DNA of 64,000 nucleotides from positions 62,001 to 126,000 of IMG/VR virus record IMGVR_UViG_3300017917_001123; one strand, written 5' to 3'. The notes under the pieces were generated by a model that worked only from the letters and a program-made list of their open reading frames with translations, was not told the origin of the DNA and did no database searches. Numbering within the stretch: position 1 is the stretch's first letter; every line of letters starts with the position of its first letter. Shown piece by piece: positions 4,155-27,846 of this stretch. A program made the translations under genes and the position numbers.

Positions 4155-4183
4155 TTGACATTGACCAATTTTCTAAATATAAT
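4155..4183 (+). promoter_or_regulatory. consensus sigma70 promoter with overlapping TAAATA late box
   Basis: TTGACA(4155-60)-17 nt-TATAAT(4178-83); TAAATA at 4174-79; SD AGGAG downstream. Confidence 0.8.
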
Positions 4184-8699: not shown

Positions 8700-9778
8700 C
8701 AGTATTCTTAGTAGACTTAGAAGCTGTTGAAACTAGGTACACTGGTCAGTGGAAGACTTGGGTACCTAGTCTTCTTAAAAAGGCGGGACACGATGTCACA
8801 GTTATCTCTGGACCTACTGACATTCCTAACAGTACCACTCCTGGTGCTTTTCTCAATTTTGGTGGTACAAATATATACAAAGCGAGACAAGTTGAGGAAT
8901 TTAGTAGGCTATTTTGCGCCGGAACAGTTAAGCCTGGCGATCATTTTCTGTTTACTGATGCTTGGCATCCTGGCATCACGAATCTAAAATACATGAGCGA
9001 GCTTCTTAACATACCTGTTAAGATTCACGCATTATGGCATGCTGGTAGTTACGATCCTCAAGACTTCCTAGGTCGTCTAATCGGAGATGCTCCTTGGGTT
9101 AGACACGCCGAAAAGAGTTTCTTCGAGTCAATCGATCACAACTATTTTGCTACAGACTTTCACATCGACATGTTCTTACATAATCTGCTCGACTTAGGTC
9201 GTTTTGCAGATAAAGAAATTGTCTTTGAAATGTTCAATACAGGAAAGATTGTACGTACTGGATGGCCAATGGAATATATGGAAGATACACTCTTAGACTA
9301 TAAAAATATGCCTAAGCGTGATTTGATTCTATTCCCGCATCGTATAGCACCCGAGAAGCAAGTTGAGATTTTTAGAGATCTCAAAGAACAGCTACCACAA
9401 TACGAATTTATTGTGTGTCAGGATCAACAGCTAACAAAGAATGAGTATCATAATTTGTTAGGCGAGTCGAAGTTGGTATTCAGTGCGAACTTACAAGAAA
9501 CCCTAGGTATTAGTTGGTACGAAGGTGCCATTGTAGATGCTATTCCTATGGTTCCAGATCGTCTAAGCTATTCAGAAATGGCATTTGATACATTTAAGTA
9601 TCCTAGTGAATGGACTGAAAGTTATGACGCCTATCTCAAACATAGACAAGAAATCTGCTTTAAGATAATCCAGTATATGGACAATTACGATCATATGTTA
9701 CCTATGCTTCGTAAGCAGACAGCTTATCTAACAGAAAACTTTTTTAGTGCTACAAAACTATTGGAAAATATAAAATGA
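8696..9778 (+). CDS. GT-B (GT4-like) glycosyltransferase
   Basis: FPHRIAPEK donor-binding loop; E-x7-E motif (QETLGISWYEG); VPDRLSYSE; two-domain length of 360 aa. Confidence 0.85.
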   Translation: MTVFLVDLEAVETRYTGQWKTWVPSLLKKAGHDVTVISGPTDIPNSTTPGAFLNFGGTNIYKARQVEEFSRLFCAGTVKPGDHFLFTDAWHPGITNLKYMSELLNIPVKIHALWHAGSYDPQDFLGRLIGDAPWVRHAEKSFFESIDHNYFATDFHIDMFLHNLLDLGRFADKEIVFEMFNTGKIVRTGWPMEYMEDTLLDYKNMPKRDLILFPHRIAPEKQVEIFRDLKEQLPQYEFIVCQDQQLTKNEYHNLLGESKLVFSANLQETLGISWYEGAIVDAIPMVPDRLSYSEMAFDTFKYPSEWTESYDAYLKHRQEICFKIIQYMDNYDHMLPMLRKQTAYLTENFFSATKLLENIK

Positions 9779-10557
9779 AGATTGGAATCGTCGGCGCCGG
9801 ATTTGTAGGTGGCGCAGTTAAAAATGCCTACGATACGTTTCAAGTACCTGTTTTGGTACACGATCCTGTTAAAGGATTTGTTGCCAGCTGGGAAGAACTT
9901 AAAACCTGTGATGGCGTTTATGTCTGCGTCCCTAGTCCCACTTCCGATACCGGCGAGTGCGATACAAGTATCTTAGAAGATGTTCTTAAAAATCTAGCAG
10001 GTATGGAAGGTGTTATTATTAGTAAAGTAACAGCACCTCCGGGTGTTTATTCTAAACTACAAGTAATCTACCCTAATCTAGTTCACGCACCAGAGTTTCT
10101 TGTTGCGGCAACTGCTAACGAAGATTATATCAATGGTACTTTTGCCTACATCGGCGGTGCTGAAGAATATTGTCAAAAGGCTGAAGCAGTTATCCGTGCT
10201 AGCCAACCAAGTTTGACAGATGTTACTTACTGTACCATTACCGAAGCAAGCCTAGCAAAATACACCATTAACAGTTTCCTAGCTACTAAGGTTGTGTTTA
10301 TGAATCAAATTTATGATCTAGCACAGCAACTAGGTGTAAACTTTAACTCGCTAACCAACATGCTTCTAAGCGAAAAGCGTTTTGGCAACAGTCACATGCG
10401 TGTTCCTGGTCCAGACGGAAGCAGAGGTTTTGGCGGAGCATGTTTTCCTAAAGATACTGCCGCACTAGTCTATGAAGCAGAAAGAGCAGGAGTTGATTTT
10501 TCCTTACTTAAGAGTGCTATCAGTGCTAATAAAAAGCTACGCGGCCTTGACAAGTAA
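9775..10557 (+). CDS. UDP-glucose/GDP-mannose 6-dehydrogenase-family protein lacking the C-terminal domain
   Basis: GxGxxG (GAGFVG), CVPSP, KVTAPPG, PEFL, EASLAKY, GFGGACFPKD (catalytic Cys); ends at 260 aa. Confidence 0.88.
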   Translation: MKIGIVGAGFVGGAVKNAYDTFQVPVLVHDPVKGFVASWEELKTCDGVYVCVPSPTSDTGECDTSILEDVLKNLAGMEGVIISKVTAPPGVYSKLQVIYPNLVHAPEFLVAATANEDYINGTFAYIGGAEEYCQKAEAVIRASQPSLTDVTYCTITEASLAKYTINSFLATKVVFMNQIYDLAQQLGVNFNSLTNMLLSEKRFGNSHMRVPGPDGSRGFGGACFPKDTAALVYEAERAGVDFSLLKSAISANKKLRGLDK

Positions 10558-10576
10558 ACCTAAATATTAGTATAAT
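10547..10576 (+). promoter_or_regulatory. sigma70 promoter with TAAATA in the spacer (folE)
   Basis: TTGACA(10547-52)-18 nt-TATAAT(10571-76); TAAATA at 10561-66. Confidence 0.75.
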
Positions 10577-10583
10577 AACATAT

Positions 10584-10609
10584 GGCAATCCTCTGCCTTA
10601 ACATCGGAG
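10584..10609 (+). promoter_or_regulatory. candidate H-type pseudoknot in the folE 5' leader
   Basis: GGCA-ATCCTC-TGCC hairpin followed by TTAACATC; the loop is complementary to SD GGAG. Confidence 0.4.
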
Positions 10610-10615
10610 TATTAA

Positions 10616-11311
10616 ATGAGTGAAAAAAATTTAGCGCAAGCAATTAGAGAAAACATGAGACGCAACGGAAAGCGTTTCTGGGCTGGCGACAATATCAGCG
10701 AATACGTAGACGAAAATGTTCTCCCCGAACTGGTAGACGAAGCAACAGAAGCGTTTGAAAAAGTGTTGGATGCGTTGTTAATTGATCGCGAAACAGATCC
10801 TAATAGTAAGGGCACAGCACGTAGACTGGCCAAAATGTACTTTAACGAAATAATGGCAGGAAGATATGCCCCAGCACCAGACGCAACAAGTTTCCCTAAC
10901 GATTCGGAGGACCGCTACGAAGGTATGTTGGTTGTTCGCAGTGAGCTTCGCAGTATGTGTAGCCATCATCACCAACCCGTTACTGGTGTTGCCTATATTG
11001 GTATTATTGCGGCTCAACACCTCATTGGCCTCTCTAAGTACACAAGGATTGCCCAATGGTGCGCCCGACGTGGTACTCTCCAGGAGGAACTTGCTAATGA
11101 TATTGCTCGCGAGATCGCCAAAGCCACAGGAGCAAAAGACCTAGGAGTTTATATTCAAGCCACGCATGGTTGCTGTGAAAATCGTGGCATTATGGCACAT
11201 AGTTCTTTAACACAAACAACTGTATTACGTGGTGCGTTTAAAGATGATCCAGGCACAAAGAAGGAATTCTTTGACAACATTAAACTCCAACAAGAGTTTG
11301 CTCCAAGATAA
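10616..11311 (+). CDS. folE: GTP cyclohydrolase I
   Basis: SMCSHHHQP, IGLSKYTRI, LQEEL, HGCCENRG (Zn ligands Cys/His/Cys). Confidence 0.95.
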   Translation: MSEKNLAQAIRENMRRNGKRFWAGDNISEYVDENVLPELVDEATEAFEKVLDALLIDRETDPNSKGTARRLAKMYFNEIMAGRYAPAPDATSFPNDSEDRYEGMLVVRSELRSMCSHHHQPVTGVAYIGIIAAQHLIGLSKYTRIAQWCARRGTLQEELANDIAREIAKATGAKDLGVYIQATHGCCENRGIMAHSSLTQTTVLRGAFKDDPGTKKEFFDNIKLQQEFAPR

Positions 11312-11324
11312 GAAAGGAACTATT

Positions 11325-11711
11325 ATGGGCGAAACAGGATACGCAGTAGAAGCAGAAGCATATATTCCAGAACAAAAGAAAAAGAAAAAGGGAAACTTTA
11401 TCTCACGTTGGATGCTTAAGGCTCTAAAGAGCGCAGTAGCAGAAGAACAACAACAAGAAAAAGAAAGAGCCGCAATGAATCAAATTAAAATGCCACGAAG
11501 CATCGGTACTATCCAAAGTGGTCCATCTTTAGATAGCGATAAGGGAATTCGCTTCCAAGTATATAAAGCACAAGGCGGATTTGTTGTTGAAACTAACTCC
11601 TACGATAGAACTAGAGATCGTCATTTTAGCAGTCTTCATATTGTTGGCGACGATGAAAAGTTTGGTGATAAAATTGAAAAAATTATCACCATGGAGGCAC
11701 TTAAACAGTGA
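11325..11711 (+). CDS. hypothetical protein
   Basis: ATG 11325 with SD AAGGA; the longer ORF-track start overlaps folE. Confidence 0.7.
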   Translation: MGETGYAVEAEAYIPEQKKKKKGNFISRWMLKALKSAVAEEQQQEKERAAMNQIKMPRSIGTIQSGPSLDSDKGIRFQVYKAQGGFVVETNSYDRTRDRHFSSLHIVGDDEKFGDKIEKIITMEALKQ

Positions 11712-11929
11712 ACCCAGATAGCGTTATGTACGAAATGTTTGACGGATACGTTACTATGTCGTCCGTTGATGCTCAACATGAGTGGATGAACCGATATCGT
11801 ATTGACGCTATCCGGATGGGCCGTATGTGTGAAAAGTTCCCAGCTTTACAAAAGTCATGGGACGATTTTAAATTAATCTACGAAATTTGCCGGAGTCAAG
11901 ATGACATCGATCGACAAACTCATAATTAA
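11708..11929 (+). CDS. hypothetical protein
   Basis: GTGA overlap; SD GGAGG. Confidence 0.65.
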   Translation: MNPDSVMYEMFDGYVTMSSVDAQHEWMNRYRIDAIRMGRMCEKFPALQKSWDDFKLIYEICRSQDDIDRQTHN

Positions 11930-12458
11930 CCAATCTCACTTTAACAGTCTTGTAAGTAAAATTTGCAGAGACATTACTGTTAGTGGTTGGAGACCTGACT
12001 ACATTGTTGGAATTACACGGGGAGGTCTTCTCCCTGCTCTTATGATGAGTCACTACTTTAATGTCCCGTTACATACACTAAATGTAAGTCTACGAGATAA
12101 TACAAATATAGGACCTGAATCAAATTTATGGATGGCCGAGGATGCGTTCGGTTACGATAGCAATCCAGAAACTTCAATTAAATCTAACGCAGATCTTAAA
12201 AAGAAAATTCTTATAGTAGATGACATTAATGATAGCGGAGCAACACTTAACTGGATTATGAAGGATTGGCAGTCTGGATGTTTACCTAATCAAAACGACT
12301 GGAATTATATCTGGAATAATAATGTAAAGTTTGCTGTAATTGTTGATAACCTAGCTAGTAAGTGTGATGTTAAAATGGACTTTGTTGGCATGGAAGTTAA
12401 TAAAGCAGAAAAAGATGTATGGGTTGATTTCCCATACGAGGATTGGTGGACAAAATGA
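11901..12458 (+). CDS. type I purine phosphoribosyltransferase (Gpt-like)
   Basis: IVGITRGGL, PRPP-binding ILIVDDINDSGATL, C-terminal WVDFPYE. Confidence 0.9.
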   Translation: MTSIDKLIINQSHFNSLVSKICRDITVSGWRPDYIVGITRGGLLPALMMSHYFNVPLHTLNVSLRDNTNIGPESNLWMAEDAFGYDSNPETSIKSNADLKKKILIVDDINDSGATLNWIMKDWQSGCLPNQNDWNYIWNNNVKFAVIVDNLASKCDVKMDFVGMEVNKAEKDVWVDFPYEDWWTK

Positions 12459-12658: not shown

Positions 12659-13026
12659 CAAGATTAGAAGGATTCGTACAAAAGGGTTGGGGACACGAAT
12701 TAATTTGGTGTACCACTGACAAATACTGTGGCAAACTTTTGAAATTTAACAAAGGTGCCAAATTCAGTATGCACTTCCATGCTGAAAAAGATGAGACTTG
12801 GTTTGTCCTAGATGGCAAGTTCGAAGTGAAGTTTATCGACACTAAAGACGCACATCAAGGAAGCGCAATTCTTAATCCAGGTGATACGTGGCATAATCCG
12901 CCACTATTCCCACATCAAGTTATTTGTCTAGAAGAAGGTACTATCATCGAAGTTAGTACGCCCGATTCAATTCAAGACAACTATCGAGTAATGCCCGGAG
13001 ATAGTCAACGTGAGAGTAATGGTTAA
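12655..13026 (+). CDS. cupin (sugar-phosphate isomerase-like)
   Basis: KGWGHE, SMHFHAEKDETW, HNPPLFPHQ, EVST. Confidence 0.85.
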   Translation: MTRLEGFVQKGWGHELIWCTTDKYCGKLLKFNKGAKFSMHFHAEKDETWFVLDGKFEVKFIDTKDAHQGSAILNPGDTWHNPPLFPHQVICLEEGTIIEVSTPDSIQDNYRVMPGDSQRESNG

Positions 13027-13411
13027 CGGCACCTTTGATATTGTCCATAGAGGACATATCGAACTACTAAACTACGCAAAAAGTCAAGGCGATTTTTTGC
13101 TAGTTGCCATTGATACAGATCGTAGAGTTAAAGAACTCAAAGGAGAAAAACGTCCTATTAATAATCAATGGGACAGGTGGTTTTTGCTTGATAACCTACG
13201 AGCTGTAGATACTGTTAGATTTTTTGATAGTAAAGAAGAGCTAATAGAGATAATGAAAGAATACAAACCAGATGTCTACGTTAAGGGCGGGGATTGGAAA
13301 CGAGACAAGCCTGGTACAGCAGAACAATATTGTGATAAAGTAATTTACTATGACAGAGTCGGTTCATATTCAACAACCAAAACCATTGACGATATTATTA
13401 ATCGGGGATGA
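13010..13411 (+). CDS. nucleotidyltransferase, HldE/RfaE domain II-like
   Basis: NGTFDIVHRGH (HxGH), KG..RPIN, VKGGDW, STT. Confidence 0.88.
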   Translation: MRVMVNGTFDIVHRGHIELLNYAKSQGDFLLVAIDTDRRVKELKGEKRPINNQWDRWFLLDNLRAVDTVRFFDSKEELIEIMKEYKPDVYVKGGDWKRDKPGTAEQYCDKVIYYDRVGSYSTTKTIDDIINRG

Positions 13412-14120
13412 TTGCCTCGACGTCTACCAATTCGGTAGCGTAGATCGCATTTCGCCCGAGGCGCCTGTTCCCGTCTTTAAGTACGGGCGGAATGAAACTG
13501 TAGGCGGAATGGCACGTAACGTGAAGCGCAATCTAGAAGAACTAGGTTGTATTGTTACTTACATGTGCGGACAAACAAGTGTTAAGACACGCCTTATCGA
13601 CCAAAGATCAAAACAACATGTTCTCCGCGTAGACAACGACAATCGCAGTCAACCCCTATTATTTGAAGACATTCCATTCAACCTAAATAGTGCTAATCTA
13701 GATGCTATTGTAGTGTCTGACTATGACAAAGGTTATGTTAGTTACGAACTAATCGAAAAACTAATTGCTAATTTTAAAGGACCTGTATTTGTTGATACAA
13801 AGAAAACAGACTTAAAGCGATTAGAAGGCGCATACATTAAAATCAATGAGCTCGAGTATAGTAAATTGATTACTAAATGCTCAGGAATTATTGTTACACT
13901 AGGAGAAAAGGGTGCTCGTTACAACGACGTAATTGTGCCGGCTCCTAAGGTAGAAGTTAGTGATGTTTGCGGAGCAGGAGATACCTTTTTATCTGCTCTC
14001 ACATATAGATATTGCCTAAGTAAAGATATTATAGATGCTATGGAATTTGCGGTTAAGGCAAGCTCTATAACAGTACAGCATCTAGGAAATTACGCACCAG
14101 CGTTAGGAGAATTAAAATGA
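13350..14120 (+). CDS. PfkB sugar kinase, HldE/RfaE domain I-like
   Basis: GDDCLD..RISPEAPVP, GGMARNV, VSDYDKG, KINE, DVCGAGDTF. Confidence 0.9.
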   Translation: MTESVHIQQPKPLTILLIGDDCLDVYQFGSVDRISPEAPVPVFKYGRNETVGGMARNVKRNLEELGCIVTYMCGQTSVKTRLIDQRSKQHVLRVDNDNRSQPLLFEDIPFNLNSANLDAIVVSDYDKGYVSYELIEKLIANFKGPVFVDTKKTDLKRLEGAYIKINELEYSKLITKCSGIIVTLGEKGARYNDVIVPAPKVEVSDVCGAGDTFLSALTYRYCLSKDIIDAMEFAVKASSITVQHLGNYAPALGELK

Positions 14121-15223: not shown

Positions 15224-15384
15224 TGCAAGTAAGAGCTTCAGCAGATGTAGGTAAGTGCGGTTGCGGTCGTAGCCCAACTGGTAAATGTATCGGATGGCAT
15301 GGCCTAACCGAAGACGAGTTTAAGAAAAAACTCGAGGAATATAAACTTACTGAACAAAAAGCTACAGGAACTCCAAGTGAGTAA
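15223..15384 (+). CDS. CDGSH/NEET-type [2Fe-2S] miniprotein (53 aa, absent from the ORF track)
   Basis: MQVRASADVGKCGCGRSPTGKCIGWHGLTEDEFKKKLEEYK...; C-x-C-x2-S-x4-C-x-G-x-H; SD AGGAG; TAATG coupling; overlaps the queE start. Confidence 0.75.
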   Translation: MQVRASADVGKCGCGRSPTGKCIGWHGLTEDEFKKKLEEYKLTEQKATGTPSE

Positions 15385-16234
15385 AATCAAAGTCGCAGAG
15401 CTGTTTTACAGCATACAAGGAGAAGGACGCTTTATGGGCGTTCCTTCTGTCTTCTTACGTACATTTGGTTGTAATTTTACATGTGCCGGATTTGGCATGC
15501 CAAGAGGAGAACGAAGTGTTGAAGCAGAAAATATTGACGCATCTAAGTACACCGAGTACAAATCGCTTCCTTTGGTATCTACAGGTTGTGATAGTTACGC
15601 TTCTTGGGATCCTCGCTTTAAGCATCTATCTCCCCTTCTGGATACTACTGCGATTGCCGATGCTATTGTGGATACGTTACCTTACAAGGAATGGCGGGAC
15701 GAACATCTCGTAATTACAGGTGGCGAGCCTTTGCTAGGTTGGCAACGTGCTTATCCAGACTTGCTTAATCATCCTAAGATGACTAGCTTAAAAGAGCTAA
15801 CTTTTGAAACAAACGGTACAATGCGTTTGACAAAAGATTTTAGACATTTCTTGCTAGACTGGACACTAAGCCCAGTTCATGGTCGAAGAGGTTACAATGC
15901 CCTTACATTTAGTGTAAGCGCAAAACTTCCTTGCTCAGGCGAACCGTGGGAAGATGCTATTAAGCCAGAAGTTGTTTGTGACTACGAACAGGTTGGTTAC
16001 ACATACCTTAAGTTTGTTATTGCTTCAGAACAAGACGCACTAGATGCCGATCGTGCCGTAGAAGAATATCGCAAGGCAGGATTCAACGGTCCTATCTATC
16101 TAATGCCAGTCGGCGGCGTTGAAAGCGTTTATGCTCTTAACAATCGTCGTGTAGCAGATCTCGCTATGAAGAAGGGCTATAGATATTCCGATAGATTACA
16201 AGTTCCGCTCTTTAAAAACGAGTGGGGAACTTAA
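15377..16234 (+). CDS. queE: 7-carboxy-7-deazaguanine synthase (radical SAM)
   Basis: ELFYSIQGEG, FLRTFGCNFTC...GCDS, VITGGEPL, FETNGT, LKFVI, YLMP, RLQ. Confidence 0.92.
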   Translation: MSKIKVAELFYSIQGEGRFMGVPSVFLRTFGCNFTCAGFGMPRGERSVEAENIDASKYTEYKSLPLVSTGCDSYASWDPRFKHLSPLLDTTAIADAIVDTLPYKEWRDEHLVITGGEPLLGWQRAYPDLLNHPKMTSLKELTFETNGTMRLTKDFRHFLLDWTLSPVHGRRGYNALTFSVSAKLPCSGEPWEDAIKPEVVCDYEQVGYTYLKFVIASEQDALDADRAVEEYRKAGFNGPIYLMPVGGVESVYALNNRRVADLAMKKGYRYSDRLQVPLFKNEWGT

Positions 16235-25740: not shown

Positions 25741-27846
25741 TTAATATTTAATGATAGGTAAGAGCGCCACGTTACGTGGTCTTGTTTCATCGCCGCCTGT
25801 CGAGTGCATAAAGTTTCCTCTACCATCTCTGTAACAAGTAGAACCATCTGGTTCATCTGGGCTATGATAAATGTTTGGTCCGGACCAGTCAACTTGCGGG
25901 AATCCGTATTGATCGTGACTACCGCCCTGTTCTTGGCTCAGTGTTACACCGTGTTTGTGAGATCTAAATGAATCACCTTGCGATGTACCGACAGTTCTTC
26001 CGCCATCAATGCCTCGACCTTGGTCAGCACCGCGAATAAATTCGCCACGCAAATCTGGTAGATTAAATGTGCCGCCTGCTCCGCCGTATGTATAACCAAT
26101 CGCGGCAAATAAGGCAGGATATGACGCTGTTGATTTAGCAGAGCCATCACAGACTAAGAAACCGCTCGGCGGTGTACTTGCCGCATGGTAGAATACTGTT
26201 CCTGCTGGAACAAACTCTAAACCATTAATACTACCTTGTAAAGAACTTTGAACAGCATCAATTAAACTAAGTAAGGCGTTCTTTGTGGCATCGACGTATG
26301 CCTTAACTGCTCTTTGAGTAGGCAAACGAGAATCTGAGTTAGCAGTTAGTTGAGCATCACGATCAAAACGTGATATTGAGTTAGCAAAACTATCTAATAA
26401 CTGATTAACTGTAGCACTTAAACTACCGATATTAGCAGTATCAGAAACTATGCTAGAAGAATAAACTGTATTGTACGATGACTGAGGCGATCCAATGTTA
26501 TACACTTGGTCCTGTGTAGGAATAATTGAGCCGTCTAAAGTAAGTTCGCCTGTTACGTTTAACGTAGTAAACGGATCTGCAGCAGAAACGCCGTTAGTAT
26601 AAATTGTACTAAACTTTCTTCCTGAAGACCCAATATCGTTACTACCGTCTGTTTGAGGAATAAATTCAATTCCAGAAGCTAATTGCCAATTTCCTTTAAT
26701 AGTACCTTGGTCAGCGCCAGAGTTTAAACCAAATGCATAAACATTCTTCCAACGCAACGCAGGAGCGCCTAAATCATTTCCGTTATCAGAAGCAGGTGTA
26801 AATTGACTCGATGCTTCAACTTGCCAAGAGCCAATAATGCTTCCTGATGCTAGAGCAGAGCCTGCGTTAAGATTTTTTGTATATACGTTATTAAATCGTT
26901 GTCCTGCTGAACCAATACTTTGACTTTCATTTGCGTTCGGATTTAACGAGTCTCCGTTGAACGTTAACGAGCTTCCGTTTGATGATAATGTAATAACGCC
27001 GTTACCGTGTTCAATAACAAGTTTATCAGGGAAGTTTCCGCCCTGCTCTTGGAATGAAATTTTACTATGACCAGCACTTCCAAACTGGAGCATATAGTTA
27101 TTATCAATGAACCAATTTCCTGTAATGTGCTCGTCTTGATCACGTCTAGGGTATGTCTCGTCTAACTGTTCGTGTAACCCATGAAATACTACATCAGTTG
27201 ATGTTGTTGAATAACGAGTACTCGGACTGTAATTCTTTAGAGTTAATCCTCTGTAAACGTATCCAAAACCTATAGATGATGCTTCAACGCCTCCCATAAA
27301 TGTTTCGCTACTTAGAACGCCAATTACTTCGCCGTCTAAAATAATTTTAATAACAGGATGCGGATTTAGACCGTTGTCTAAAAGTGTTTCAGAACTTAAT
27401 TTTGTTTTTCCAAAACCAGGAACTGCTTCTGGGCCGATTAGTGTGTAAGAAGATCCTGTGTTAATGAATAATTGCTGTTTTTCGGTGTTAAACCAAAAGT
27501 CTCCGGGGGCTTGACTTGAAACTATTGCTCCACTAGCAATCGATGTATCAGTTGTGGTATTAGAAAATAAAGTAACAGACAACGGGCGCCATGTTCCACC
27601 GTCGTAAATCATAGGTCTCATTACATTAGCAGACTTGTCATACCAGAGCTGACCTGCTAATGGACTTGCTGGCGGAGTTTCCTTAGAAAAGTTTTCTAAT
27701 AGATATAAAAAGTTTTCGTTTTGTTGAGCGCCATAACCAGATACGTTCTTACCAATTAAATTAATAGACAACGTTGTGTTGTCAATGATATAATCATCTA
27801 AGGCAATTAGCGCCGAACCGTCTGATTTATAAATGTTGTATGCCAT
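25741..27846 (-). CDS. tail fibre with tail-collar domain (gp12-like tip)
   Basis: Same N-terminal domain; collar PAGTV..PPSGFLVCDGS..YPALFAAIG..FNLPDLRGEFIRG; HKH metal motif; ETRPRNVALL. Confidence 0.85.
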   Translation of the reverse strand: MAYNIYKSDGSALIALDDYIIDNTTLSINLIGKNVSGYGAQQNENFLYLLENFSKETPPASPLAGQLWYDKSANVMRPMIYDGGTWRPLSVTLFSNTTTDTSIASGAIVSSQAPGDFWFNTEKQQLFINTGSSYTLIGPEAVPGFGKTKLSSETLLDNGLNPHPVIKIILDGEVIGVLSSETFMGGVEASSIGFGYVYRGLTLKNYSPSTRYSTTSTDVVFHGLHEQLDETYPRRDQDEHITGNWFIDNNYMLQFGSAGHSKISFQEQGGNFPDKLVIEHGNGVITLSSNGSSLTFNGDSLNPNANESQSIGSAGQRFNNVYTKNLNAGSALASGSIIGSWQVEASSQFTPASDNGNDLGAPALRWKNVYAFGLNSGADQGTIKGNWQLASGIEFIPQTDGSNDIGSSGRKFSTIYTNGVSAADPFTTLNVTGELTLDGSIIPTQDQVYNIGSPQSSYNTVYSSSIVSDTANIGSLSATVNQLLDSFANSISRFDRDAQLTANSDSRLPTQRAVKAYVDATKNALLSLIDAVQSSLQGSINGLEFVPAGTVFYHAASTPPSGFLVCDGSAKSTASYPALFAAIGYTYGGAGGTFNLPDLRGEFIRGADQGRGIDGGRTVGTSQGDSFRSHKHGVTLSQEQGGSHDQYGFPQVDWSGPNIYHSPDEPDGSTCYRDGRGNFMHSTGGDETRPRNVALLPIIKY

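What the first reader, a model, noticed from the sequence alone, without database searches (positions are those of the whole stretch)
10584..10615. Minimal pseudoknot in the folE leader: candidate purine/deazapurine-sensing switch
Seen: the promoter at 10547-10576 gives a ~33-nt leader almost entirely occupied by GGCA-AUCCUC-UGCC-UUAACAUC-GGAG. The loop (UCC or CUC) can pair with the SD, forming an H-type pseudoknot. Established: class I preQ1 riboswitches are very small H-type pseudoknots with an A-rich tail after the stem (UUAACA in the T. tengcongensis aptamer) that can occlude the SD of que genes. Inference: a reduced or variant element giving feedback control of the first committed step (GTP use). 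The 6-nt loop is shorter than in canonical preQ1-I, so it is not a standard member.
Basis: partly seen in the sequence, partly recalled or inferred. Interest (0 to 1): 0.65.

Follow-up and report, generated by a model that had tools for sequence, protein, structure and literature searches.

The report
Conserved mini-pseudoknot in phage folE leaders
The 26-base leader of this giant phage's GTP cyclohydrolase I gene is a real RNA element, kept almost letter for letter in at least 196 related phage contigs, always on the ribosome-binding site of folE, and it looks like a new, unusually small metabolite-sensing switch, though no ligand has been shown.

Summary
The window is part of a 331.6-kb aquatic jumbo phage. 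Window 10584-10609 reads P1 GGCA/UGCC, loop AUCCUC, tail UUAACAUC, then SD GGAG six bases before the folE ATG. A perfect TTGACA-18-TATAAT promoter sits just upstream.

I found the same element in 196 distinct IMG/VR contexts:
- There is one copy per genome, always 5-10 nt upstream of a folE start.
- FolE identity among these loci falls as low as 37%.
- The P1 core is always paired, with up to four pair types per position.
- The loop is AUCC(A/U/C)C and the tail ends AAC(A)UC-GGAG, both nearly invariant.
- The P1 closing pair predicts the tail variant without exception.
- One lineage shows a compensatory change in the proposed pseudoknot (UCC:GGA to CCC:GGG).

The element is absent from Rfam and essentially absent from 185,579 cellular genomes.

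It is not a preQ1-I member. It lacks that family's invariant G-C floor pair, the L1 uridine and the adenine next to P2, and it gets no model score. It does keep the overall design and the cytosine before the 3' strand of P1.

The phage also encodes QueD-like and QueE-like enzymes, and the QueD-like gene has its own covarying pseudoknot leader.

Best reading: a new translational riboswitch candidate, probably sensing a 7-deazapurine. Ligand binding is untested.

The parts
10547..10576 (+). Promoter: -35 TTGACA (10547-10552), 18-nt spacer containing CCTAAATA (10559-10566), -10 TATAAT (10571-10576). The predicted start of the RNA is about 10583-10584, the first base of P1.
   Evidence: 12/12 match. 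The same TTGACA..CTAAATA..TAtAAT arrangement precedes most homologous motifs at 5-12 nt. The transcription start is inferred; no RNA data exist.
10584..10587 (+). P1 5' strand, GGCA
   Evidence: Pairs with 10594-10597. The three inner pairs are paired in 62 of 62 distinct sequences. Pair types seen are CG/AU/GC/GU, AU/UA/CG/GC and GC/CG. Positions not fixed by the search pattern are paired in 63 of 63 contexts.
10588..10593 (+). Loop AUCCUC. A10588 is L1. U10589-C10591 is the proposed P2 5' strand (an anti-SD). U10592 is variable (A, U or C in homologues). C10593 is an invariant cytosine immediately before the 3' strand of P1.
   Evidence: Loop counts over 196 distinct contexts: AUCCAC 151, AUCCUC 38, AUCCCC 2, ACCCNC 4, GUCCUC 1. 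In a scan that left loop positions 2-5 free, the loop was AUCC(A/U/C)C in all 62 contexts, with GGAG in 61.
10594..10597 (+). P1 3' strand, UGCC
   Evidence: The MFE fold of six diverse homologues gives the same 4-bp hairpin with the SD left free.
10598..10605 (+). L3 tail UUAACAUC. Conserved core A(A/U)C(A)UC. The extra A (10603) occurs only when the P1 closing pair is A-U.
   Evidence: A closing A-U goes with ..CAUC in 25 contexts (12 distinct sequences). A closing C-G, G-C or G.U goes with ..ACUC in 111 contexts (49 distinct sequences). There is no exception among the intact motifs.
10606..10609 (+). Shine-Dalgarno GGAG. G10606-A10608 is the proposed P2 3' strand.
   Evidence: The start codon follows 5-10 nt later in the motif-first set B and 5-11 nt in the FolE-selected loci. 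Loop position 2 against the SD: U with GGAG 192 contexts, C with GGGAG 3, C with GGAG 1.
10616..11311 (+). folE, GTP cyclohydrolase I (231 aa), the regulated gene
   Evidence: Pfam PF01227 8e-39. NCBIfam FolE models about 1e-38, below their equivalog cut-offs. PHROG 2197.
11901..12458 (+). Purine phosphoribosyltransferase-like gene near folE. Context only; not shown to belong to the switch.
   Evidence: Pfam Pribosyltran 1e-12. Weak xanthine/HGPRT NCBIfam hits.
15377..16234 (+). QueE-like radical SAM gene (7-carboxy-7-deazaguanine synthase family). Pathway context supporting a 7-deazapurine route.
   Evidence: All five NCBIfam QueE models hit at E 1e-10 to 1e-11, below their cut-offs. The N-terminal FYSIQGEG...GCNFTC aligns with the QueE-like protein of phage Phosso.

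Best explanation
Window 10584-10609 is a cis-acting translational control element of folE. It is a 26-nt RNA that can fold as a minimal H-type pseudoknot:
- P1 is 3-4 bp.
- L1 is one A.
- P2 pairs loop UCC with GGA of the Shine-Dalgarno sequence.
- L2 is N plus an invariant C.
- L3 is NNA(A/U)C(A)UC, lying along P1.

With only P1 formed, the SD is free and FolE is made. When P2 and the tertiary contacts are locked, the SD is hidden and initiation falls. The frequent weak TTG start codon would sharpen this effect.

I think the lock is a small molecule, which would make this a riboswitch of a new class. The most likely ligand is a 7-deazapurine product of the FolE-QueD-QueE route (preQ0, CDG or preQ1), read on its guanine-like face by the invariant C. 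That would give end-product feedback on the first step of the pathway.

Shown: the element exists, its P1 covaries, it is specific to folE, it overlaps the SD, it is single-copy, and the pathway genes are present.

Inferred: P2 (one compensatory lineage), the L3-P1 contact (a perfect association), the OFF-on-binding logic, and the existence and identity of any ligand.
For: 1. Strong purifying selection on unpaired bases. Across 196 distinct contexts the loop is AUCC(A/U/C)C in 191 and the tail ends in UC-GGAG. When the loop and SD were left free in the search they still came out the same in 61 of 62 contexts.
2. P1 covaries. G.U pairs occur, so the + strand RNA is what is selected.
3. It is specific to folE. 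Searches by motif alone gave FolE directly downstream in 79 of 80 and 79 of 80 loci. There is one copy in the 331-kb genome and in five other large contigs.
4. The RNA is nearly identical in front of FolE proteins only 37-40% identical to ours (L150, L172, L186). That suggests a partner that does not change, such as a metabolite or the ribosome, rather than a co-evolving protein.
5. P2: the lineage with loop ACCCNC has GGGAG (L308, L356, L358). No AUCC loop has GGGAG.
6. Tertiary coupling: the closing pair predicts the tail variant without exception.
7. Design parallels with preQ1-I. An 'AC' or 'UC' precedes the 3' strand of P1, as in the three preQ1-I types (PMC11625349). A pyrimidine-rich loop pairs with GGA of the SD, as in type III (PMC10622847).
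8. Pathway context. QueE-like and QueD-like genes are present. Vibrio phage 2.275.O, whose FolE is 54% identical, has folE beside queF, yhhQ-like and queC-like genes. Its folE leader aligns to Rfam PreQ1 (12.5 bits, below threshold).
9. The QueD-like gene of the same phage clade carries a different covarying H-type pseudoknot leader. Two distinct RNAs on two pathway genes fits aptamers better than one protein operator.
10. TTG starts make up 51% of motif-bearing loci against about 5% of motif-less loci, my count.
Against: - No ligand, binding or expression data exist. No RNA-seq run holds this phage.
- Evidence for P2 rests on effectively one evolutionary event. L016 has the loop change without the SD change. 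Because the 3' strand of P2 is the SD, it is constrained anyway.
- The hairpin energy is ordinary.
- A 3-bp P2 with a one-base L1 is at the steric limit.
- The phage shows no TGT/DpdA and only a doubtful QueC. The end product of the pathway, and so the ligand, is uncertain.
- About a third to two thirds of related folE loci lack the element (24 of 80; about 100 of 159). It is therefore dispensable.
- The sequences are related, so the shuffle controls overstate significance.
Confidence: 0.5

Rival explanations
1. It is a protein-binding translational operator. A phage or host protein, possibly FolE itself acting as an autoregulator, recognises the loop and tail of the hairpin and blocks the adjacent SD.
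For: - Hairpin-plus-SD operators with conserved loops are common in phages; this rests on established knowledge of T4 regA and gene 32/43-type control and is not tested here.
- Conserved unpaired bases fit a protein contact as well as a ligand pocket.
- Being single-copy and gene-specific would fit autoregulation.
Against: - The RNA is nearly invariant while FolE diverges to 37% identity, and the FolE N-terminus varies by 0-51 residues.
- The gene downstream of folE is not linked to the motif (22 of 103 motif-bearing loci against 15 of 120 motif-less).
- The QueD-like gene uses a different RNA structure, not the same operator.
- The association between closing pair and tail, and the UCC/GGA to CCC/GGG change, point to RNA-RNA contacts.
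Confidence: 0.22
2. It is a ligand-independent structure: a constitutive pseudoknot or 5'-terminal hairpin. It would set a fixed low translation rate, respond to temperature or ions, or protect the 5' end of the mRNA from decay.
For: - The element starts at or within a few bases of the predicted transcript 5' end in most loci.
- An anti-SD loop next to an SD can attenuate translation without a ligand.
- TTG starts suggest that low expression is wanted.
Against: - A stabiliser or simple anti-SD hairpin does not need an invariant A, an invariant C before the 3' strand of P1, or a conserved AAC(A)UC tail.
- P1 sequence is free to vary, but its length and the loop size are fixed.
- It occurs on one gene per genome, although the same promoter type serves other genes.
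Confidence: 0.2
3. It is a degenerate but genuine member of the preQ1-I family, in effect a fourth type, binding preQ1 in the canonical pocket.
For: - It shares the H-type design, the C before the 3' strand of P1 preceded by A or U, and a pyrimidine loop pairing with GGA of the SD as in type III (PMC10622847, PMC11625349).
- A related phage has a preQ1-I-like folE leader.
Against: - The G-C pair at the top of P1, invariant across preQ1-I and contacting the preQ1 methylamine (PMC10622847), is C-G, A-U, G-C or G.U here.
- L1 is A, not the essential U.
- The base before P2 is C, not the essential A.
- No Rfam PreQ1 match at E<=10.
Confidence: 0.05
4. It is a DNA-level or antisense feature: an operator palindrome for a DNA-binding protein, a minus-strand terminator, or a chance hairpin.
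For: - The terminator scan lists the same hairpin on the minus strand, 10597-10584.
- The arms form an inverted repeat directly after a promoter.
Against: - The arms keep complementarity, not sequence, and include G.U pairs that would be A.C on the other strand.
- The conserved letters are in the asymmetric loop and tail.
- The motif is always on the folE sense strand.
- Chance is excluded by the 196 contexts.
Confidence: 0.02

Closest known systems
preQ1-I riboswitch, type III (E. coli/Shigella yhhQ leader; PMC10622847)
   Same: - It is a very small H-type pseudoknot.
- A short pyrimidine-rich loop acts as an anti-SD and pairs with G-G-A of the SD.
- A cytosine preceded by A lies directly before the 3' strand of P1.
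- Control is translational and OFF on folding.
- The associated pathway is deazaguanine metabolism.
   Different: - The loop is 6 nt (AUCCNC) against 9 (UUCCCUCAC).
- P1 is 3-4 bp against 5.
- There is no invariant G-C floor pair, and L1 is A, not U.
- L3 ends in C(A)UC instead of a run of adenines.
- The P2 register is UCC:GGA rather than CCU:AGG.
- It occurs in phages upstream of folE, not in gammaproteobacteria upstream of yhhQ.
- It gets no covariance-model score.
preQ1-I types I and II (B. subtilis queC, T. tengcongensis; Rfam RF00522)
   Same: - The order P1-L1-P2-L2(C)-P1'-L3-P2' is shared.
- UC or AC precedes the 3' strand of P1.
- L3 contains AAC.
- Vibrio phage 2.275.O has such an element in the same position before folE (12.5 bits).
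   Different: - About 8 nt shorter.
- The pocket determinants other than the C are not kept.
- P2 is the SD itself.
- Rfam finds nothing at this site.
THF-II riboswitch (the 'folE motif' of Alphaproteobacteria; PMC9881143)
   Same: It regulates folE at the level of translation. Its ligand also has a guanine-like face.
   Different: THF-II is a hairpin of about 50 nt with internal loops, not a pseudoknot of 26 nt. No Rfam family matched 10450-10750 at E<=10. The gene context here is QueD/QueE, not folate enzymes.
Minimal viral H-type pseudoknots (luteovirus frameshift type, about 28 nt; from my own knowledge, not tested here)
   Same: Comparable size and geometry: short stems, an L1 of 1-2 nt, and a loop lying in the minor groove of stem 1 forming base triples.
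   Different: Those sit inside coding sequence and stall ribosomes to cause frameshifting. This one lies in a 5' leader and contains the SD.

Membership tests
preQ1-I riboswitch (RF00522; types I-III) | Score at or above the Rfam gathering cut-off (39 bits) | tested here: not met
   No match in the window at the gathering threshold. No match in 10450-10750 at E<=10. The whole-genome search gave only two chance hits elsewhere, at 9-10 bits. Caveat: the same model exceeds its cut-off in only 1 of 14 control genomes, so it is a strict test.
preQ1-I riboswitch (RF00522; types I-III) | P1 helix supported by covariation | tested here: met
   The three inner pairs are 100% paired in 62 distinct sequences, with 2-4 pair types each. 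Positions not fixed by the search pattern are paired in 63 of 63 contexts. P1 is 3-4 bp rather than 5.
preQ1-I riboswitch (RF00522; types I-III) | P2 pseudoknot between the hairpin loop and the 3' tail or SD | tested here: inconclusive
   UCC:GGA is possible in 192 of 196 contexts. CCC:GGG occurs in 3 contexts of one lineage. There is one mismatch case, L016. The 3' strand is the SD, so it is constrained independently of P2.
preQ1-I riboswitch (RF00522; types I-III) | Specificity cytosine directly before the 3' strand of P1, preceded by A or U | tested here: met
   C is invariant in intact motifs. The base before it is A in 153 contexts, U in 41 and C in 2. The feature definition comes from PMC11625349.
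preQ1-I riboswitch (RF00522; types I-III) | Invariant G-C pair (G on the 5' strand) at the top of P1, forming the pocket floor | tested here: not met
   The closing pair is C-G in 43 sequences, A-U in 13, G-C in 5 and G.U in 1. The feature definition comes from PMC10622847, section 11.
preQ1-I riboswitch (RF00522; types I-III) | Uridine in L1 and adenine at the 3' end of L3, both contacting the ligand; an A-rich L3 | tested here: not met
   L1 is A (once G). L3 ends in C(A)UC, with only two conserved purine positions, A(A/U).
preQ1-I riboswitch (RF00522; types I-III) | Binds preQ1 or preQ0 | not testable with these tools
   Needs in-line probing, ITC or SPR.
preQ1-I riboswitch (RF00522; types I-III) | Association with queuosine or 7-deazaguanine genes | tested here: met
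   folE is the first step of the pathway. QueE-like and QueD-like genes are in the same genome. Relatives have folE beside queF, queC, yhhQ or queE. No TGT/DpdA was found.
THF-II riboswitch (folE motif) | Match to the Rfam model or to the long-hairpin architecture | tested here: not met
   No Rfam family matched at E<=10. The architecture differs: a 4-bp hairpin plus a pseudoknot.
Riboswitch in general | Conserved structured cis element with covariation, specific to genes of one pathway, overlapping an expression signal | tested here: met
Riboswitch in general | Direct, protein-free ligand binding that changes expression | not testable with these tools
   No RNA or biochemical data. Only DNA runs hold the phage.

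The most novel reading that the evidence does not exclude
A phage-specific riboswitch class whose aptamer, about 26 nt including the SD, would be the smallest natural one known. It would sense a 7-deazapurine (preQ0, CDG or preQ1) through a pocket unlike that of preQ1-I. It would work together with a second, larger pseudoknot switch on the QueD-like gene, so that giant phages regulate their own deazapurine synthesis with RNA sensors.
Probability: 0.4. Interest if true: 0.85.

Novelty: new variant of a known kind. Interest (0 to 1): 0.76.

Why it matters
Riboswitches native to phages are rare. A 26-nt aptamer would set a new lower size limit for natural ligand-sensing RNA; the current record holder is the 30-36-nt type III preQ1-I (PMC10622847).

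The element is very easy to test. It can be made as a synthetic 27-34-mer, the plausible ligands are few and several can be bought, and it has an E. coli-type promoter and SD for reporter work.

It would show that jumbo phages apply feedback control to a nucleotide or DNA-modification pathway. It also gives a handle on what that pathway makes in phages that have FolE, QueD-like and QueE-like genes but no DpdA.

Even if the partner turns out to be a protein, this is a widespread, unannotated phage regulatory RNA with at least 196 distinct occurrences.

Tried and rejected
- **Rfam.** At the gathering threshold, and at E<=10 on the leader, nothing matched. RF00522 over the whole genome gave only chance hits elsewhere.
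- **Single-sequence folding energy.** Uninformative.
- **Megablast and blastn against cultured phages.** No close relative. Only distant folE matches in Rhizobium and Sinorhizobium phages.
- **The three closest cultured phages (Phosso, RHph_I1_18, Vibrio 2.275.O).** They lack the mini-motif. Rfam on their leaders gave only a sub-threshold PreQ1 alignment in the Vibrio phage.
- **A loose home-made descriptor for canonical preQ1-I in all loci.** It produced only noise and was abandoned.
- **The alternative P2 register, CNC with GAG.** Rejected because N is A in about 78% of motifs.
- **Intercistronic position as an argument against a 5'-end role.** Withdrawn. The loci that seemed to lack a promoter have a TTGCAA-17-TAAAAT embedded in the end of the upstream gene.
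- **The downstream ORF (11325-11711) as a linked regulator.** No association.
- **The motif in cellular genomes.** 83 pattern hits, about the chance number by my own estimate of roughly 70. Only two are genuine, both on small phage-like contigs.
- **Expression evidence.** No RNA run holds the phage.
- **Literature.** No paper describing this element was found. McCown et al. 2014 is not held. The Tte sequence could not be verified.

Full report
**Where the window lies.** The window is bases 62001-126000 of a 331,570-bp IMG/VR virus record, estimated 93% complete. It was recovered from a pond metagenome. GC content is about 40%. No cultured phage is close at the DNA level.

**The observation.**
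- TTGACA at 10547-10552, an 18-nt spacer, and TATAAT at 10571-10576. This scores 12/12. It is one of two perfect sites in 64 kb, against 0.09 expected.
- GGCA at 10584-10587, loop AUCCUC, UGCC at 10594-10597, tail UUAACAUC, GGAG at 10606-10609, a six-base spacer and ATG at 10616.
- The ORF 10616-11311 is GTP cyclohydrolase I.

Taken alone the hairpin is unremarkable. The z-score is 0.13 for the leader and -1.34 for the 26-mer. No Rfam family matches, even at E<=10.

**Comparative evidence.** A FolE-based scan of IMG/VR returned 80 loci with FolE 82-89% identical to ours.
- 56 of them carry the same element upstream of folE.
- It is always on the sense strand, one per locus. GGAG lies 5-11 nt before a start codon that is in frame with FolE.
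- A covariance model built from 38 distinct copies finds one copy in the window with filters off. It also finds one in the whole 331-kb genome and one significant match in each of five other contigs of 139-317 kb.

To remove the bias of selecting loci through FolE, I searched IMG/VR by the motif alone.
- The type B pattern gave at least 120 contigs. Of the 80 fetched, 79 have FolE starting just downstream and one is a chance hit.
- The type A pattern left loop positions 2-5 and the SD free. It also gave at least 120 contigs, with FolE downstream in 79 of 80. Of 62 distinct contexts, 61 have loop AUCC(A/U/C)C plus GGAG.
- FolE in these loci is as little as 37-40% identical to ours, yet the RNA is almost unchanged.
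- Sampling two such distant FolE clades added more copies and the informative variants.
- In total I count 196 distinct sequence contexts.
- The same pattern in one genome for each of 185,579 prokaryotic species gave about the chance number of hits. Only two are genuine, both on 4-5.5-kb phage-like contigs binned into Crocinitomicaceae MAGs. The element is therefore phage-specific.

**Structure.** The three inner P1 pairs are paired in every distinct sequence. The pair types are CG/AU/GC/GU, AU/UA/CG/GC and GC/CG.
- The covariation score is 0.46 against 0.09 in shuffles (0 of 500 reach it), and it collapses when the partners are slid.
- In the motif-first set, the two P1 positions not fixed by the pattern pair in 63 of 63 contexts.
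- G.U pairs show that the selected molecule is the + strand RNA.
- The fourth, outer pair forms in about 70% of sequences.

The unpaired letters are the most conserved. L1 is A, the loop has UCC, a variable base and an invariant C, and the tail ends in A(A/U)C(A)UC.

Two observations go beyond a plain hairpin:
- The identity of the closing pair predicts the tail. A-U goes with ..CAUC, and C-G, G-C or G.U goes with ..ACUC, with no exception among the intact motifs (25 and 111 contexts). That is what a base triple between L3 and the top of P1 would give. Both types occur in both FolE clades.
- The proposed P2 distal pair changes on both sides in one lineage: loop ACCCNC with GGGAG in L308, L356 and L358. 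No AUCC loop has GGGAG. L016 has the loop change alone.

This second point amounts to one evolutionary event, so it is supportive rather than conclusive. Because the 3' strand of P2 is the SD, little covariation can be expected there.

**Variants that look decayed.** Some loci have damaged or missing copies:
- L306: the last loop C has become U and GGAG is lost.
- L574: the SD is lost.
- L078: the hairpin is deleted.
- L059 and L064: the loop is AUACCUC and the SD region reads AGGAA.

About a third of the close relatives and about two thirds of the distant clades lack the element. They have a short unstructured leader with an ordinary SD. The element is therefore an accessory, not a necessity.

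**Mechanism.** In nested folds of six diverse copies, only P1 forms and the SD is open. P2 would bury G-G-A of the SD. A 3-bp P2 cannot be stable on its own, which is the usual situation for a switch that needs a ligand or protein to lock it.

Half of the motif-bearing genes start with TTG (71 TTG, 67 ATG). Among motif-less loci the figure is about 5%, by my count. A weak start codon makes initiation depend more on the SD. That would increase the effect of hiding it; this last step is inference.

**What the partner might be.** I favour a metabolite for these reasons:
- The RNA stays constant while FolE and its N-terminus change greatly.
- The element serves one gene per genome.
- The neighbouring ORF is not linked to it.
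- The QueD-like gene of the same phage clade has a different H-type pseudoknot leader in which both stems covary. A shared operator for a protein would instead look the same at both genes.

The pathway context is 7-deazapurine synthesis:
- QueE-like at window 15377-16234.
- QueD-like at genome 26712-27263.
- A purine PRTase-like gene at window 11901-12458.
- Only a doubtful QueC and no TGT/DpdA.

FolE relatives in cultured phages sit next to queF, a yhhQ-like transporter and queC-like genes (Vibrio phage 2.275.O), queE-like (Phosso) or PTPS (RHph_I1_18). The Vibrio phage's folE leader aligns with Rfam PreQ1 over stem, loop end and AAAAAACUA tail. The score is only 12.5 bits, E 1.9.

**Comparison with the known family.** The closest known system is preQ1-I, above all type III. 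That type has a 9-nt pyrimidine loop pairing with the SD, and a specificity C preceded by A (PMC10622847, PMC11625349).

Ours keeps the architecture and the C. It fails three features that those papers describe as invariant or essential:
- the G-C pair at the top of P1 that contacts the preQ1 methylamine;
- the L1 uridine;
- the adenine next to P2.

It also gets no covariance-model score. I therefore do not file it as a preQ1-I member. It works like one in design, but if it binds a ligand the pocket is different and the ligand need not be preQ1. preQ0 and CDG lack the methylamine.

**Rivals.** A protein operator (0.22) and a ligand-independent attenuator or 5'-end stabiliser (0.20) remain open. 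A canonical preQ1-I member (0.05) and DNA-level or chance explanations (0.02) are largely excluded.

**Verdict.** The element is a new, widespread, phage-specific structured leader of folE and a strong riboswitch candidate that is not in Rfam 15 or the searchable literature. It is a new variant of a known kind. Ligand binding is the one decisive point still missing, and it is cheap to test.

Noticed in passing
L085:1417-1490 (G000 about 26640-26713, outside the window); related loci L388-L467: A second conserved leader lies upstream of the QueD-like (PTPS) gene. It is an H-type pseudoknot. P1 is 5 bp and covaries (UGCGG/CCGCA, AGAGG/CCUCU, AGUGG/CCACU, AGACG/CGUCU). P2 pairs GACGC with GUGUC and also covaries (L449 GACAG/CUGUC, L404 GACAU/GUGUU, own GGCAU/GUGUC). 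L2 is UCAUC, ending in C before the 3' strand of P1. L3 is A-rich, UUAAAcAuUCUGC. A strict pattern finds it in 27 of 81 loci. No Rfam match at E<=10.
   Followed up: partly
window 15377-16234, 11901-12458, 13010-14120; whole genome: The phage has FolE, QueD-like and QueE-like genes and a purine PRTase-like gene, but no TGT/DpdA hit and only a weak QueC-like PP-loop protein. It also has HldE-like kinase and adenylyltransferase genes, cupins, a HIT protein, 2OG oxygenases and a UDP-glucose dehydrogenase fragment near folE. This might point to a nucleotide-level deazapurine route, like PRTase-dependent toyocamycin or tubercidin synthesis (my own knowledge), rather than base exchange in DNA.
   Followed up: partly
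window 10547-10576 and 4155-4183; L085:1383-1412; most related loci: The phage promoters share a conserved C(C)TAAATA block in the spacer between a TTGACA-like -35 and a TATAAT-like -10. This suggests a phage-specific promoter class or an added factor contact.
   Followed up: no
motif-bearing loci, e.g. L012:2918-2930, L185: TTG is the start codon of folE in 71 of 139 motif-bearing contexts (ATG in 67). In motif-less folE loci it is about 5%. The second codon is usually ACA in both cases.
   Followed up: partly
L097:2259-2330 (Vibrio phage 2.275.O, MG592671.1 336305-336376): The folE leader reads UGCGG-UAAGUAAUC-CCGCA-UUAAAAAAACUA and aligns to Rfam PreQ1 (12.5 bits, E 1.9, below the cut-off). 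A stem, AUCCAAAA/UUUUGGAU, follows it. The gene sits in a queF / yhhQ-like / queC-like / folE cluster.
   Followed up: partly
L095:2397-2450 (Sinorhizobium phage Phosso): The folE leader has a hairpin UGUGG-ACAUAAAACGCUC-CCACA followed by a long A-rich tail and UAGGAG. The shape is like preQ1-I, but there is no Rfam match.
   Followed up: no
L023:2447-2845, L124, L130: In a few contigs an ORF of 129-132 aa with no family match is inserted between the motif and folE. In L023 its stop overlaps the folE start (TAATG), so the motif would control a two-gene unit there.
   Followed up: no
L521, L526 (genome contigs): The only genuine copies in the prokaryote genome collection lie on contigs of 5.5 and 4.1 kb binned into Crocinitomicaceae/Lishizhenia MAGs. 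These are probably phage contigs. They give a weak hint about the host, which conflicts with the sigma-70-type promoters and SD use.
   Followed up: no
L306, L574, L078, L059/L064, L016, L383: Natural variants that would serve as ready-made mutants. L306: last loop C changed to U and GGAG lost. L574: SD lost. L078: hairpin deleted. L059/L064: loop AUACCUC with UAGGAA. L016: loop ACCCAC with an unchanged GGAG. L383: L1 A changed to G.
   Followed up: partly
window 9775-10557: The gene upstream of folE is a 260-aa protein matching only the central domain and part of the N-terminal domain of UDP-glucose/GDP-mannose dehydrogenases. It is a truncated or split form. The -35 box of the folE promoter overlaps its last codons.
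   Followed up: no
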